Assembly (NCBI GenBank): GCA_904063045.1
Contig: CAJFCJ010000019.1
Location: 1-64,000 of the forward strand
Length of the DNA: 64,000 bases
Source of the DNA: Dimorphilus gyrociliatus
Lineage: Eukaryota > Animalia > Annelida
Direction: 5' to 3'
Shown here: one piece after another, positions 33,674-38,342 of the stretch
Layout: each line of letters starts with the position of its first letter
Position numbering within the stretch: the stretch's first letter is position 1
Notes under the pieces: generated by a model
The model's input: only the letters and a program-made list of their open reading frames with translations
Databases searched by the model: none
Told to the model about the DNA's origin: nothing
Position numbers and translations under genes: made by a program

Positions 33674-36124
33674 TCATACTTTCTTTTGGTTGTCGATTTC
33701 GAGCGTTTTCTTGTTTTTTTTCTCGTCCTCTAAAACCCTTCCAACATTTTTTAAAGAGGCCTCCAGAGCGTCGATTATATCGCATAACGACCAATAAAGA
33801 TTAACTGGCGTTGACGTTTGGCAATGAGAAGTGATCTTTTCAAGGCCAAGATTTAGACATAAATCGACAGATTTGATTAAACATCCAAATTGCGTAATAT
33901 CTGGTTCAAAAGAATTCAAGTATCTAGTGCTTTTAGAACATTTATTTATTCTATAGGAATTTGAAAAGTTTAGTGGAATCGGATGAACCCAACAACCATC
34001 AACTAATCGTTGGAAGGCGATATTCGTCAATTTCAAATTATTAACAACCACTAATTTCCGGTGGCATTTGCGAATGAACTTAGCCAGATTAATTAGCATC
34101 TCAATCCATTGCGAATTTTCTATTATAATTCTACCTTGTTTCCTGCTGTCCGTTTCCTTTACTAAAACTATGTCCATAGTTAGAATTTCCATCGTCTCTC
34201 GATTTCCAATAAACTTTGTTACTAATGCAAAAGGTAGAAAATCGTATGATTCTTCCAATTGTAGTAGGCCTATTAATTTAGGTATAAGGAGATGATTGTC
34301 GCTGTCATCTGTAAATAGATAACTTAGAATAGCCGCTTCTTTGAAGACATCCACAATCGCCAAAGCTCCCTTGACATTTTTCTCGTACAACTTTATAGCT
34401 ACTACGTCTCTTTCATTAGACGTCTTTTTAGGTAGGGAATCTGGAATTTTGTAGTTACTATAATAACCCCCAATTATAACAGAGTGCTTGCCGACTCCTA
34501 CTACGGAATCAGTAAATTCAATCGATTCCACGTCGGTGAACTTCAAAAGGGGTAAAGTCCCTAGAAAACCAGTTGTTGGTCTTTCAATATCGATCAGCTT
34601 ATGCATATTACCCATGTACTCCTTCCTAATGTATTCCATCGATCGTTGTCGCCTGGCAATTTGTGGTACGGAAATTTCGTTCTTCCGCCGAGAAGCGTAC
34701 GAGGCTTTTCTATTTAGTTCCTCAATTAATGTTCTCAGTTGGCGTAGAGCGTCCTCTTTTATATCCTCCTCATTTCTTCTGTCAAATGGTTCGACTTGTT
34801 CCCCATTTACCTTATTTGGTAATGGAAGTAACGGAGAAACATGCTTAGTTGGACGCTTTTTAATCGACTTTCCATCGATTACTTTAGCCGATCTCGTATT
34901 ATCCTTGAGCATCTCATTGGTAAACCCTTCAGTACTTTTGACTCTGTTCAAATTCCATTTATGTTTGCCAACATCGGACGTGTAAGTGTATTGTCCCTTA
35001 ATAACCTTTTGAATAATGTCATCTTCCGTTCCCAGCACTTCAATGAGTTTTTCATTTAAATCAAACATATCAATTCTCTTAGCATGAGTCTGCTTTTCTG
35101 CTTTCCTAAACCAAAAATTGGTAAGATAAGGGGGTAGTGTCTCATTGAAACCCTTGTCTGTAATAAAAAAGGGTAGGTGCTGCCTAGAGCATATACGCCT
35201 ATTCTTGTTGCTTGTTATAAACGATAATGGAAATTGTACAGGAAAATTCCTATAAGAGTCTTCTAAGCCTGACTGTAAATTAGTTGATATAGTGATTCCT
35301 TTTTGATTTTCATTCGTTAATGAATTTAAGACTGGGGATACTTCTCCAAGCTTTCTAAAGGCTTTTTCAGAGGATAAGCACTTACTATCTCCCTTTTGTT
35401 TCCAGTTGCTTTTGTCAATTAAGGGTAGATTTGCTTCTATTTCTTTCGACCGCTTTCCATTCTGCAATTCTAGAAAATTTTCCCTTTCAATTTTACTTTC
35501 TAATACCGCCTCTTTTTCTGCTTCTACGACGTTCCTCTTTTCTAATGCGATTACACTGTCAGATCCTAATGCGGTTTTCTTTTGCTTTTGTTCTTCGCCA
35601 ATCTTATTATTCAGCTGCGATTCACTTTTTTTTGCAATTCTCTCATCGCTTATAAGTTCTCTACTATTACTTTTATTCACTGATCTTTTCCCGCTTTGCT
35701 TAACTATTCTCGGTGGTGCGGGAAGCTCGTCAAGGGGCAATTCTTCTAAAGTTGATATAATATCATCCTCTAATCTTAGGTTCCTTCCTGGATTAGGTGT
35801 TATTCGTTCAACTCCTTCAGGCTCTTCACTTAATTGGATTATTTCCTCCGAATCTAAATATCGACGACAAGGGCAACAACCGCAGGACTTTCTTCTCGCC
35901 CTTTTGTTGAAAGAGCTCGTAATCTTTACACTAGAAGTTTTACGAGTTGAAAATATAGGCTGAAAGCTGCCATTAGTTTTATTAATAATTTTCAACTCGG
36001 CATAGTCGTTGTTAATATTCCTAGAATTAGTTGAAATACGTTTACAGCGAATTGATTGACTCTTAGCCCTATAGCGTATATTTTTGGCAAGGGACCTTCT
36101 GTTTGCACTAGACCACCCTTCCAT
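33674..36124 (-). CDS. Intronless 816-aa protein with a C-terminal degenerate protein-kinase-like (pseudokinase) domain
   Basis: Long uninterrupted ORF from an ATG. Kinase landmarks occur in order: VGVGKHSV (Gly loop), VVAIK, KEAAIL (alphaC Glu), PKLIG, VVVNNLKLTNI (in place of HRDLKxxN) and LNFS (in place of DFG). Confidence 0.75.
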   Translation of the reverse strand: MEGWSSANRRSLAKNIRYRAKSQSIRCKRISTNSRNINNDYAELKIINKTNGSFQPIFSTRKTSSVKITSSFNKRARRKSCGCCPCRRYLDSEEIIQLSEEPEGVERITPNPGRNLRLEDDIISTLEELPLDELPAPPRIVKQSGKRSVNKSNSRELISDERIAKKSESQLNNKIGEEQKQKKTALGSDSVIALEKRNVVEAEKEAVLESKIERENFLELQNGKRSKEIEANLPLIDKSNWKQKGDSKCLSSEKAFRKLGEVSPVLNSLTNENQKGITISTNLQSGLEDSYRNFPVQFPLSFITSNKNRRICSRQHLPFFITDKGFNETLPPYLTNFWFRKAEKQTHAKRIDMFDLNEKLIEVLGTEDDIIQKVIKGQYTYTSDVGKHKWNLNRVKSTEGFTNEMLKDNTRSAKVIDGKSIKKRPTKHVSPLLPLPNKVNGEQVEPFDRRNEEDIKEDALRQLRTLIEELNRKASYASRRKNEISVPQIARRQRSMEYIRKEYMGNMHKLIDIERPTTGFLGTLPLLKFTDVESIEFTDSVVGVGKHSVIIGGYYSNYKIPDSLPKKTSNERDVVAIKLYEKNVKGALAIVDVFKEAAILSYLFTDDSDNHLLIPKLIGLLQLEESYDFLPFALVTKFIGNRETMEILTMDIVLVKETDSRKQGRIIIENSQWIEMLINLAKFIRKCHRKLVVVNNLKLTNIAFQRLVDGCWVHPIPLNFSNSYRINKCSKSTRYLNSFEPDITQFGCLIKSVDLCLNLGLEKITSHCQTSTPVNLYWSLCDIIDALEASLKNVGRVLEDEKKNKKTLEIDNQKKV

Positions 36125-36553
36125 AAATTAGCTAATCTTAAGGCTGAAATGAATAATAAATTCAAATAATATGCTCTGACGAGACAAATTATTTAAAGAT
36201 TTATATTACTTGTTCAGCCTATGATGAAAACTATTTGACAGCCAGATGGCACTTAAAAAAAATAGTTCTATGGCCGACTTTTAATTTTCTATTAATATTT
36301 TCTAAAGCAGTAACCCCTGTTAGAGGTTTTAAAATAATAACAAAATTTTAATAAAACAAAATTATTATGAAATTATGTTATTTGTAAATGTTGAGCAATT
36401 GGAATTTTATCGCGTATTAATTTTTATCTGCTGACGTCTTTCCATTCTTTTCGCACTACTTCCGACGGCATTGTAGCCATAGGAGGTTGATTATCGTAAA
36501 ATACGGTAATCTAGCAAGTTTTCGACTTTTACTGTCTGTGTTTACTGTTCACA

Positions 36554-37018
36554 ATTCCACCGAGGCAGGAGAGTAGCCGTTGGGCCAGGGTAAGTTTTTG
36601 TATATTATGTTAAATCTAACCACTCCTAAATGGTGTGCCCATGCTGAAAATGTAGATTAAGCTAAAAAAAGGCATTTTAAAAAAATATTCTCTTATCAAC
36701 TATTAAAAATCATGTCAGAATTTAACATGTATCAATTTCAATAAAACTGGGCTTAAGCAACCTTGAAATTCGACATGAATAGTTCTGCCATGCTGACAGA
36801 ATACACGTGATTCGAATCACGTGATGTCTGGTATTCTGAAACCAGCAAACAGAATCGATATTACCTTATAAAAAATTATATAAACTTCTCTTTTAAATTT
36901 TCAACAGGGAGGTTTCTCAGGTTTCAGCAGATCTGTGTATAACAAGTGTCCGGAAGGAGGGGCACTCTACAGGCTAAAGTTCGATTACAACGCCGAACCT
37001 CCTTGGGATCCCAGCTGA
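36554..37018 (+). other. Non-AUG (ATT/AUU)-initiated spliced uORF (uCC) of ODC, 48 codons, exons 36554-36589 and 36908-37018
   Basis: ACA-ATT-C start context. The peptide is IPPRQESSRWAR|GGFSGFSRSVYNKCPEGGALYRLKFDYNAEPPWDPS*. A phase-0 intron (gtaagt at 36590 to ttttcaacag at 36907) keeps it in frame. The stop lies 67 nt before the ODC ATG, and I see no ATG in the spliced leader. Confidence 0.88.
36804..36823. promoter_or_regulatory. Perfect 20-bp palindrome with two CACGTG E-boxes in ODC intron 1
   Basis: CACGTGATTCGAATCACGTG is its own reverse complement and lies in the 5'-UTR intron 36590-36907. Confidence 0.65.
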
Positions 37019-37085
37019 TATTTGCTAAGGGTTCAAGACTTCAGAATTTATTATAATTACGTGTTTATTAAAGTATCTTAACAAG

Positions 37086-38342
37086 ATGAAGTGTAACTAT
37101 ATGACCGATGTACAAATCGTTGACGATGTCGAAGAGGTAATCGCAGAGAAAATGAAGAATGATAGTGAAGATGCATTCTTCGTTGCTGACTTGAGCGACG
37201 TTGTTAGAAAACTGGACAAGTGGAAGAGACTACTACCACGAGTTGATCCGCACTATGCCGTTAAATGTAACGATGATATATCTATCTTGTCCATGATGGT
37301 GTCTTTGGGCATGGGATTCGATTGCGCCTCCAAAGCTGAAATTGAAAGAATTATAGGCCTAAATGTTGATCCATCCAGAATTATATATGCTAACCCTTGT
37401 AAGCAAAATTCTCACATCAGAATGGCTGCAAAGAATGGCGTATCTTTGACCACATTTGACAATGAAGAAGAATTGTATAAAATTGCAAAGGTTCATCCAG
37501 AGTGTCAACTGGTTCTTAGAATTCTACCTCCCGATGACATAAAAGCGCAATGTCAGTTAGGGATGAAGTACGGAGCTCATCCCAAAAATTGGGAACAATT
37601 ACTCTTGAAGGCCAAAGAGTTAAAATTGAACGTTGTAGGCGTATCTTTCCACGTTGGTAGTGGCTGTTATGAGGCTAAGGCCTTCTCAGCTGCTGTCCGA
37701 ATGGCTCATGACGCTTTTTGCCTGGCAAAAACTCTTGGTTTTGAATTCAATCTACTAGATATTGGCGGAGGCTTTCCTGGGCATGTAGGAGCACCAATAA
37801 CTTTTGAAGAAATTGTTTCAGACCTAAAGCCTACTCTTGATGAACTCTTTCCAGAAGAAAGTGGAATTAGAATAATTGCCGAACCTGGACGCTATTTTGT
37901 AGCATCTGCCCTTACTTTGGTTGTCAACGTGATTGCTAAACGAGAAACAGAAAATGAACAGGGAGAAAAGTCCATAATGTACTATGTCAACGATGGCGTT
38001 TATGGATCATTTAATTGTCTACTCTATGACCATGCTGTAGTAACTCCAGAATTTAAACAAGATTACACGGGTATCAAACATGACTCAAGTGTTTGGGGTC
38101 CAACATGTGATGGCTTAGATTGTCTTAACGAACGTATTCGCTTACCAGAACTTTTCGTTGGTGACTGGCTTGTATACAAAAATATGGGAGCTTATACTAT
38201 GTGCGCTGCATCAAACTTTAATGGAATGCCTAAACCCAACTTATTCTACGTTGTCCTTAATGGAATATACAAGAAACTAAAAAATCCAACTCTGGTTGAT
38301 AATCTTTCACCTCGTACTCCTCTAATTGCTGTCAAAGCTTAA
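37086..38342 (+). CDS. ODC1: Ornithine decarboxylase (418 aa, single coding exon), catalytic residues intact
   Basis: PHYAVKCN (PLP Lys), GFDCAS, FHVGSG, LDIGGGFPG, IAEPGRY, VNDGVYGSFN, WGPTCDGLD (catalytic Cys) and MGAYT. Confidence 0.97.
   Translation: MKCNYMTDVQIVDDVEEVIAEKMKNDSEDAFFVADLSDVVRKLDKWKRLLPRVDPHYAVKCNDDISILSMMVSLGMGFDCASKAEIERIIGLNVDPSRIIYANPCKQNSHIRMAAKNGVSLTTFDNEEELYKIAKVHPECQLVLRILPPDDIKAQCQLGMKYGAHPKNWEQLLLKAKELKLNVVGVSFHVGSGCYEAKAFSAAVRMAHDAFCLAKTLGFEFNLLDIGGGFPGHVGAPITFEEIVSDLKPTLDELFPEESGIRIIAEPGRYFVASALTLVVNVIAKRETENEQGEKSIMYYVNDGVYGSFNCLLYDHAVVTPEFKQDYTGIKHDSSVWGPTCDGLDCLNERIRLPELFVGDWLVYKNMGAYTMCAASNFNGMPKPNLFYVVLNGIYKKLKNPTLVDNLSPRTPLIAVKA

What the first reader, a model, noticed from the sequence alone, without database searches (positions are those of the whole stretch)
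36554..37085. Hidden AUU-initiated, intron-split uORF ending in AEPPWDPS*: a polyamine-sensing translational switch on a catalytically intact ODC
Seen: an ATT in good context (A at -3) at 36554 opens 12 codons (IPPRQESSRWAR). A phase-0 intron joins them to 36 more codons ending FDYNAEPPWDPS-stop, 67 nt before the ODC ATG, and the spliced leader has no AUG. Established: animal ODC homologs, notably vertebrate antizyme inhibitor AZIN1, carry a conserved non-AUG uORF (uCC) that starts at AUU and ends in a PPW motif. High polyamines inhibit eIF5A, ribosomes pause at PPW, and queuing boosts AUU initiation and represses the main ORF. Inference: the same feedback acts here on an enzyme that keeps its PLP Lys and catalytic Cys, so product-level feedback would be directly on polyamine synthesis. 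The class of element is known; this instance is invisible to AUG-based and unspliced ORF calling.
Basis: partly seen in the sequence, partly recalled or inferred. Interest (0 to 1): 0.82.

Follow-up and report, generated by a model that had tools for sequence, protein, structure and literature searches.

The report
Polyamine-sensing upstream reading frame on ODC
The leader of this animal's only ornithine decarboxylase gene carries a real, spliced, AUG-less upstream reading frame ending in PPWDPS, a clear new member of a polyamine-sensing class described in 2008, so it is well supported but not a new kind of element.

Summary

- **Sequence.** ATT at 36554 (A at -3) opens 12 codons. A GT..AG intron (36590-36907) follows, then 36 codons ending PPWDPS-stop at 37018, 67 nt before the ODC ATG at 37086.
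- **Splicing.** RNA contigs from three public runs show exactly this junction and reach back to 36466. The AUU is therefore inside the mRNA, and the roughly 310-nt spliced leader has no AUG.
- **Conservation.** A relative with 83% ODC identity keeps the frame. Ten of 15 differences fall at third codon positions (dN 0.05, dS 0.42). The frame is the best-conserved segment of the locus.
- **Family.** Homologous frames sit upstream of ODC in abalone, amphioxus, acorn worm, feather star, leech and two unnamed transcripts. They share the start (CA.A-ATT-CC) and the C-terminal block. Where both halves could be read (five sequences) they also share the length, 47-50 codons. In most genomic loci the intron lies just before GG.
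- **Genome context.** The genome has one ODC, one such motif, an antizyme gene with the classic +1 frameshift site, and eIF5A.

This is the upstream conserved coding region (uCC) of Ivanov et al. 2008, which was already reported on ODC homologs of six animal phyla. Polyamine sensing here is inferred by homology, not shown. One side observation is unexplained: the nucleotides just after the stop (UAUUUGCU) are conserved across phyla.

The parts
36412..36437 (+). Putative core promoter: a TATA-like TATTAA (36415-36420) and a CRE-like TGACGT (36432-36437), both conserved in the relative L001
   Evidence: Alignment with L001. Transcript contigs begin 30-50 nt downstream (L004). The role is inferred only.
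36466..36589 (+). Leader exon 1. 36466 is the 5' end of the longest RNA contig; the true start is probably 36445-36466.
   Evidence: table 8 (X1 record 2; X5 record 9 covers 36481-36573). The metatranscriptome contig L004 begins at the equivalent of 36469.
36489..36511 (+). Conserved 8-10 bp hairpin in the leader, about 45 nt upstream of the AUU
   Evidence: It is predicted in the window, L001 and L004. A U/C change keeps the pairing as G-U or G-C. There is no Rfam match. Function unknown.
36554..36556 (+). AUU start codon of the uCC, in the context cACAAUUCC
   Evidence: CA.AATTCC.C is invariant in 7 sequences from several phyla. It is the only near-cognate codon conserved in position. In L004 an in-frame TGA lies 6 codons upstream.
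36554..36589 (+). uCC codons 1-12
   Evidence: The peptide differs from L001 and L004 by one conservative change, plus synonymous changes.
36590..36907 (+). Phase-0 GT..AG intron of 318 nt that splits the uCC
   Evidence: The junction is seen in RNA contigs of X1 and X2 and in a loose end of X5. L004 is the spliced mRNA form in a relative. An intron lies directly before GG (a single G in Helobdella) in Haliotis, Branchiostoma and Helobdella, where the upstream acceptor sequence was read. In Ptychodera the same position is inferred from the translated upstream frame only.
36804..36823 (.). Two CACGTG E-boxes 14 nt apart, inside a conserved island of the intron
   Evidence: L001 has the same spacing and position. 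This is a side observation, not part of the translational switch.
36908..37018 (+). uCC codons 13-48 plus the TGA stop. PPW is 36998-37006.
   Evidence: E30, W33 and P35 of exon 2 are invariant across 10 sequences.
37019..37032 (+). Post-stop block beginning TATTTGCTAA, conserved as nucleotide sequence
   Evidence: Nine of 10 sequences across phyla keep (T/C)AT(T/C)TGCT. Unexplained.
37019..37085 (+). 67-nt spacer between the uCC stop and the ODC AUG, in a different reading frame
   Evidence: It is only 49% identical to L001 beyond the first 14 nt.
37086..38342 (+). Ornithine decarboxylase CDS: 418 aa, no intron, PLP lysine and catalytic cysteine present
   Evidence: It is the only ODC in the genome.

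Best explanation
This is the upstream conserved coding region (uCC) of an invertebrate ornithine decarboxylase mRNA, a member of the animal ODC-homolog uCC family.

Shown here:
- The mRNA starts at or before 36466.
- It is spliced 36589/36908.
- Its roughly 310-nt leader has no AUG.
- The 48-codon frame from AUU 36554 to UGA 37018 is under purifying selection as a peptide.
- It is homologous to uCCs upstream of ODC in five named phyla.

Inferred from the AZIN1 work:
- The AUU is a weak start, so at low polyamine most scanning ribosomes pass it and translate ODC.
- At high polyamine, eIF5A function is impaired and the few ribosomes on the uCC pause at Pro-Pro-Trp (codons 43-45, 126 nt after the AUU).
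- Ribosomes queue back to the AUU, which raises initiation there and blocks access to the ODC AUG.

The product of the pathway would thus lower synthesis of its first enzyme. This would act in parallel with the antizyme frameshift sensor that the same genome encodes.
For: - Junction and 5' extent.
- AUG-free leader: (0.14% of shuffles).
- Coding constraint: window versus L001 differences by codon position are 3/2/10 (P 0.0085). dN is 0.046 and dS 0.42, against ODC dN 0.095.
- The uCC is 89-90% identical at nucleotide level. ODC CDS is 79%, the intron 54% and the spacer 49%.
- The upstream leader shows no third-position bias: 9/4/6.
- Cross-phylum homologs share the PEG...L(D/N).N.E-PPW-(D/E)-P-(S/N)-stop block.
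- The AUU context is invariant, and total length is 47-50 codons in the five sequences where both halves could be read.
- The motif is unique in the genome and ODC is single-copy.
- eIF5A and an antizyme with the ...GPLWCS-UGA +1 site are present.
- Family description and mechanism: PMC2811004 section 6, PMC9082881, PMC8705083, PMC11058473.
Against: - No ribosome profiling, reporter or polyamine data exist for this organism. Initiation at the AUU, pausing at PPW and polyamine dependence are all by analogy.
- CUG codons lie 3 and 6 codons upstream in frame in the window, so the exact start is not proven.
- Synonymous divergence in the uCC (0.42) is well below that of ODC (1.6). Some conservation is therefore at RNA level and not explained by the peptide.
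- In Ptychodera and Anneissia the motif is APW and PEW. A strict PPW is not required for the frame to persist.
- The RNA evidence is from assembled contigs, which cannot give transcript starts or abundances.
Confidence: 0.82

Rival explanations
1. The conserved frame is translated and regulatory, but initiation is at another near-cognate codon (CUG at 36545 or 36536 in the window, UUG in the relatives) and not at the AUU.
For: In-frame CTG or TTG lies 3 codons upstream of the ATT in the window, L001 and L004.
Against: Those codons sit in poor context (T at -3, T at +4). They change identity between relatives and are absent at that position in L006, L007, Ptychodera and Anneissia. The ATT and its context are invariant.
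Confidence: 0.07
2. The conservation reflects an RNA element (a structure or a protein-binding site) in the leader, and the open frame is incidental and untranslated.
For: Synonymous divergence is low in the uCC. The Ser codon AGC and the post-stop UAUUUGCU are invariant. The neighbouring non-coding leader is 78% identical.
Against: Third-position bias is specific to the frame. Across phyla the amino acids are kept while the codons for E, P and P vary. The frame, length and stop position are preserved through a conserved phase-0 intron. There is no Rfam match.
Confidence: 0.05
3. The 48-residue product acts as a free micropeptide, with a function of its own, and not in cis on the ribosome that makes it.
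For: The peptide is under purifying selection along most of its length.
Against: Conservation is concentrated in the last 12 residues next to the stop. The frame is always linked to ODC, uses a weak start and sits in an AUG-free leader. This is the signature of cis-acting nascent-peptide uORFs, and for AZIN1 the effect is in cis (PMC2811004).
Confidence: 0.03

Closest known systems
uCC of vertebrate antizyme inhibitor 1 (AZIN1) mRNA (Ivanov et al. 2008, 2018)
   Same: Both are AUG-less frames in the leader of an ODC homolog. Both start at AUU in good context and have adjacent prolines followed by Trp near the C-terminus, with Pro-Ser as the last two residues. The proposed logic is also the same: pause at PPW, queue back to the AUU.
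   Different: The main ORF here is a catalytically competent ODC, not the inactive inhibitor. I could not align the two directly, because no AZIN1 leader was fetched and the primary papers are not held. Function here is untested.
uCCs of invertebrate and non-mammalian ODC mRNAs (animals of six phyla, PMC2811004)
   Same: This is the group the element belongs to. The start context, length, PEG and L-D-x-N-x-E-PPW-D-P-S blocks and intron position match the Haliotis, Branchiostoma, Ptychodera, Anneissia and Helobdella loci fetched here.
   Different: Exon 2 is three residues longer, with a GFS repeat after GG.
Fungal ODC uCCs (Pezizomycotina, Basidiomycota, Zygomycota)
   Same: They are non-AUG conserved frames with adjacent prolines upstream of ODC.
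   Different: They are thought to have arisen independently. Their lengths are 22-100 codons and they share no sequence similarity (PMC2811004).
Antizyme +1 frameshift sensor
   Same: It is also a polyamine-sensing translational device of the same pathway. It is present in this genome, with the site ...GPLWCS-UGA followed by DAPH in the +1 frame.
   Different: It works by recoding inside the main ORF and acts on the ODC protein, not on ODC mRNA translation.
AdoMetDC uORFs (mammalian MAGDIS; the plant small uORF ending Pro-Ser)
   Same: They are cis-acting nascent-peptide uORFs that respond to polyamines. The plant one ends with the same Pro-Ser (PMC2811004).
   Different: They start at AUG, are much shorter, sit on a different gene and stall at termination.

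Membership tests
Animal ODC-homolog uCC (Ivanov, Loughran and Atkins 2008) | Lies in the 5' leader of an mRNA encoding an ODC homolog | tested here: met
   RNA contigs join 36466-36589 and 36908 onward to the ODC ORF. ODC identity.
Animal ODC-homolog uCC (Ivanov, Loughran and Atkins 2008) | No AUG start, with a conserved in-frame near-cognate codon (mostly AUU) in good context | tested here: met
   No ATG in the spliced leader. ATT has A at -3, and CA.AATTCC.C is invariant in 7 sequences.
Animal ODC-homolog uCC (Ivanov, Loughran and Atkins 2008) | Two adjacent prolines near the C-terminus, with Pro-Ser as the last two residues | tested here: met
   The frame ends E-P-P-W-D-P-S-stop, the feature stated in PMC2811004 section 6.
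Animal ODC-homolog uCC (Ivanov, Loughran and Atkins 2008) | Amino-acid conservation, strongest near the C-terminus, among orthologous leaders | tested here: met
   dN/dS is about 0.11 with third-position bias against L001 and L004. Alignment A2 of 10 sequences covers five named phyla.
Animal ODC-homolog uCC (Ivanov, Loughran and Atkins 2008) | Direct sequence homology to the experimentally studied AZIN1 uCC | not tested
   No vertebrate AZIN1 leader was available as a tool-given sequence. The primary papers (PMC2481320, PMC5916843) are not held. The nearest chordate compared is the amphioxus ODC uCC.
Animal ODC-homolog uCC (Ivanov, Loughran and Atkins 2008) | Polyamine-dependent repression of the main ORF that needs the AUU and the C-terminal peptide | not testable with these tools
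   This needs reporters or profiling. Only the components are shown: eIF5A genes and antizyme.
Catalytically active eukaryotic ODC (group IV PLP decarboxylase) | PLP-binding lysine (mouse K69) and catalytic cysteine (mouse C360) in conserved motifs; closer to ODC than to AZIN | tested here: met
   YAVKCN and GPTCDGLD align to mouse ODC 7odc. E is 1.2e-135 for ODC against 9.8e-93 for AZIN1. Pfam PF02784 and PF00278 match. Activity itself was not assayed.

The most novel reading that the evidence does not exclude
The uCC sensor has an RNA-level component next to its stop codon that the peptide model does not explain. The last Ser codon is AGC in all nine members that end in Ser. The 8-10 nt after the stop read (U/C)AU(U/C)UGCU in nine of ten sequences, from this organism to mollusc, amphioxus, acorn worm and feather star. 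The rest of the spacer is unalignable even between close relatives. It could set termination or recycling efficiency, contact the paused ribosome's mRNA channel, or control reinitiation at the ODC AUG. I could not read the primary papers, so it may already be described.
Probability: 0.3. Interest if true: 0.5.

Novelty: new member of a known kind. Interest (0 to 1): 0.3.

Why it matters
Gene callers never report this regulatory frame, because it has no AUG and is split by an intron. Here the whole device is documented with transcript and comparative evidence, in a compact 78-Mb animal genome that has one ODC, one antizyme and eIF5A. That makes a clean system for testing how polyamines gate their own synthesis. 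The comparison also yields usable family rules:
- the start context CA.A-AUU-CC;
- a length of 47-50 codons in the five sequences where both halves could be read;
- an intron just before GG;
- natural PPW-to-APW and PPW-to-PEW variants;
- a conserved post-stop block.

The class itself has been known since 2008.

Tried and rejected
- The primary papers (PNAS 2008, Mol Cell 2018) are not held. The family definition therefore rests on a review and later papers.
- Naming the organism failed. ODC and talin searches give no close named relative: at most 63% and 48% identity, with top named hits mostly lophotrochozoan or deuterostome. The run names are coded. Earlier scan notes held nothing relevant.
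- A plain PPW scan missed the uCC in Ptychodera and Anneissia. A scan for the start motif and the PEG block then found them, with APW and PEW.
- Exon 1 of the Haliotis, Branchiostoma and Helobdella uCCs was not located.
- A +1 frameshift reading of the post-stop block was considered and dropped, because the +1 stop is not kept in amphioxus.
- Rfam gave no match on the leader.
- Exons were searched and aligned by reference. Joining was done only inside local scripts for translation, ATG counting and substitution counts.

Full report
**Observation**

- ATT at 36554 has A at -3 and C at +4.
- Twelve codons run to 36589, where a strong donor (AGG|GTAAGT) begins.
- An acceptor AG at 36906-36907 opens a second part of 36 codons ending ...NAEPPWDPS, with TGA at 37016-37018.
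- The Pro-Pro-Trp codons are 36998-37006.
- The next ATG on the spliced leader is the ODC start at 37086, 67 nt further on and in another frame.

The downstream ORF (37086-38342, 418 aa, no intron) is an ornithine decarboxylase.
- It matches Pfam PF02784 and PF00278.
- The best solved relative is mouse ODC (E 1.2e-135), well ahead of antizyme inhibitor 1 (9.8e-93).
- The PLP lysine in YAVKCN and the catalytic cysteine in GPTCDGLD are kept.

**Transcript evidence**

One run search and one read-laying run were available.
- Assembled RNA contigs from a coral metatranscriptome (X1) and a marine metatranscriptome (X2) come from two studies. Both carry a joint that skips 318 nt with GT..AG ends at 36588/36907, which is the same cut as 36589/36908.
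- A third run (X5, identical in sequence to the window) has a contig that ends at 36907. Its overhang is the last 14 letters of exon 1.
- No alternative acceptor appeared.
- The X1 contig covers 36466-36588 and 36907-38394 in one piece.
- These are contigs, so they give neither true 5' ends nor abundances.
- A conserved TATTAA (36415-36420) and TGACGT (36432-36437) lie just upstream and fit a start near 36445-36466.
- From 36455 on, the spliced leader of 313 nt has no ATG. Only 0.14% of shuffles of the same letters lack one.

**Is the frame constrained as a coding sequence?**

The protein word search found an ODC 83% identical to this one (P0002). Its genomic contig L001 is syntenic: the same upstream gene, then ODC, then talin. 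A second relative, L004, is a metatranscriptome contig that is already spliced at exactly the predicted junction.

- In L001 the frame, the ATT, the donor, the acceptor and the stop are all in place.
- Between the window and L001 the uCC has 15 nucleotide differences, distributed 3/2/10 over codon positions. The probability of 10 or more at position 3 is 0.0085.
- Nine codons change synonymously and five change the amino acid.
- dN is 0.046 and dS 0.42, against dN 0.095 and dS 1.6 for ODC itself.
- As a control, the non-coding leader upstream of the ATT shows no such bias (9/4/6).
- By segment, the uCC is the most conserved part of the locus at 89-90% identity. The ODC CDS is 79%, the 5' leader 78%, the intron 54% and the stop-to-AUG spacer 49%.
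- The low dS shows that part of the constraint acts on the RNA itself.

**Membership in the known family**

I fetched ODC loci or transcripts from more distant animals and scanned their upstream regions.

- Seven sequences carry a homologous frame upstream of ODC: two unnamed transcripts (L006, L007) and genomic loci of Haliotis, Branchiostoma, Ptychodera, Anneissia and Helobdella.
- Alignment A2 shows invariant E, W and P in the terminal block. It also shows near-invariant P-E-G, D, N, P-P and S.
- The start region CA.A-ATT-CC.C is invariant in all seven sequences where exon 1 could be read.
- The ATT is the only near-cognate codon conserved in position. In L004 an in-frame TGA lies six codons upstream of it.
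- Total length is 47-50 codons in the five sequences where both halves could be read: the window, L006, L007, Ptychodera and Anneissia.
- In the genomic loci of Haliotis and Branchiostoma, and in the window and L001, an acceptor lies directly before the GG that opens the second part. Helobdella has one before a single G. For Ptychodera the same position is inferred from the translated upstream frame. The split of the frame is therefore old and not a peculiarity of this genome.
- The published description says that animal uCCs of six phyla have two adjacent prolines near the end and finish with Pro-Ser. It also says that most start at a conserved AUU in good context and that most lack AUG (PMC2811004 section 6). 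Every structural feature is met.
- Direct comparison with the AZIN1 uCC itself was not possible. No AZIN1 leader was available as a tool-given sequence and the two primary papers are not held.

**Mechanism**

What is shown is the anatomy and the selection on the peptide. The mechanism is carried over from AZIN1.
- The AUU is a weak start, so most scanning ribosomes pass it.
- High polyamine interferes with eIF5A, and ribosomes translating the uCC pause at PPW.
- The queue that forms behind them raises initiation at the AUU and shuts off the main ORF (PMC9082881, PMC8705083, PMC11058473).
- Here the first Pro codon lies 126 nt after the AUU, room for about four ribosomes. The narrow length range where it could be measured fits a spacing constraint, but that is inference.

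The genome (78 Mb in 349 contigs) supplies the parts needed.
- It has a single ODC.
- It has a single occurrence of the E-P-P-W-(D/N)-P...stop pattern, with none in the control.
- It has eIF5A genes.
- It has an antizyme gene with the classic site ...GPLWCS-TGA followed by DAPH in the +1 frame.

Two polyamine sensors therefore converge on ODC in this animal, one on its translation and one on its protein.

**Rivals**

- Initiation at the CTG or TTG three codons upstream cannot be excluded for this lineage. Those codons are in poor context and are not conserved.
- A purely RNA-level element is contradicted by the codon-position bias. It is also contradicted by the cross-phylum retention of amino acids with varied Glu and Pro codons.
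- A trans-acting micropeptide does not fit the C-terminal concentration of conservation or the obligatory linkage to ODC.

**Novelty**

The class is known, and its published range already includes ODC mRNAs of invertebrates. Feedback 'directly on a catalytically intact ODC' is the ancestral state, not a new twist. This is a new, very well supported member.

The organism could not be named. The closest named ODCs are 55-60% identical and are mostly lophotrochozoan or deuterostome. The talin search was uninformative because of the tool's length limits. I cannot say whether its phylum is among the six.

**Things worth keeping from the comparison**

1. The nucleotides around the stop are conserved as RNA. 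The final Ser codon is AGC in nine of nine members ending in Ser. The 8-10 nt after the stop read (T/C)AT(T/C)TGCT in nine of ten sequences, across the window lineage, mollusc, amphioxus, hemichordate and crinoid. The remainder of the spacer is unalignable. I have no tested explanation.
2. PPW is naturally APW in Ptychodera and PEW in Anneissia. This bears on how strictly the pause motif is needed.
3. The intron that splits the uCC contains two CACGTG E-boxes 14 nt apart. They lie inside a conserved island shared with L001. From my own knowledge, this recalls the two Myc/Max boxes of mammalian ODC1 intron 1.
4. A conserved hairpin lies at 36489-36511 in the leader.

- The joined two-exon frame was used only inside local scripts. 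All searches and tool alignments used single exons or natural transcripts by reference.

Noticed in passing
window 37013-37032; L001 5425-5444; L006 213-230; L007 219-236; L008 8725-8742; L016 9499-9514; L009 9599-9614; L017 7539-7554: The last Ser codon is AGC in 9 of 9 members ending in Ser. The post-stop (T/C)AT(T/C)TGCT is conserved in 9 of 10 uCC loci across phyla, while the rest of the spacer is unalignable. This is RNA-level conservation with no tested explanation.
   Followed up: partly
window 36760-36830 (E-boxes at 36804-36809 and 36818-36823); L001 5168-5240: Two CACGTG E-boxes 14 nt apart sit in a conserved island of the uCC-splitting intron. They recall the Myc/Max boxes of mammalian ODC1 intron 1. 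Amphioxus has two CACGTG 691 and 839 nt upstream of its uCC exon 2; Ptychodera has none nearby.
   Followed up: partly
L009 9503-9604 (Ptychodera); L017 7452-7544 (Anneissia): These are natural variants of the pause motif: E-A-P-W in the acorn worm and E-P-E-W in the feather star. The start motif, PEG block and D-P-S-stop are otherwise intact.
   Followed up: partly
G000:C2, locus L013, minus strand (match at C2:1080762-1080941): An antizyme gene has the classic +1 frameshift site: ORF1 ends ...GSGPLWCS-TGA and the +1 frame continues DAPH... Pfam PF02784 is not involved here; the match is to PF02100 at 34 bits.
   Followed up: partly
window 36489-36511: A conserved leader hairpin (GATTATCG, loop, CGGTAATC) is kept in L001 and L004, with a one-sided change that preserves pairing. 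A possible second helix lies at 36458-36486.
   Followed up: partly
window 36124-36466: A short region of about 340 bp separates the ODC transcript from a divergent 816-aa ORF (33674-36124, minus strand). That ORF has no Pfam match and is conserved as an 813-aa ORF in L001. The region holds the conserved TATTAA and TGACGT, so it is a likely bidirectional promoter.
   Followed up: no
window, whole: CACGTG occurs 15 times in the 64-kb window, against 3.3 expected from shuffles.
   Followed up: no
window 37085 and 37052: RNA contigs of X1 and X2 read C instead of G at -1 of the ODC AUG, and X2 reads C at 37052. None of the differences listed away from contig ends falls in the uCC, though one unlisted difference lies in the exon-1 stretch covered by each of the X1 and X2 contigs.
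   Followed up: no
window 36561-36936: A contig of run X5 runs unspliced through the whole intron. This is pre-mRNA, retained intron or DNA carry-over. Retention would end the frame after 8 more codons and add upstream AUGs.
   Followed up: no
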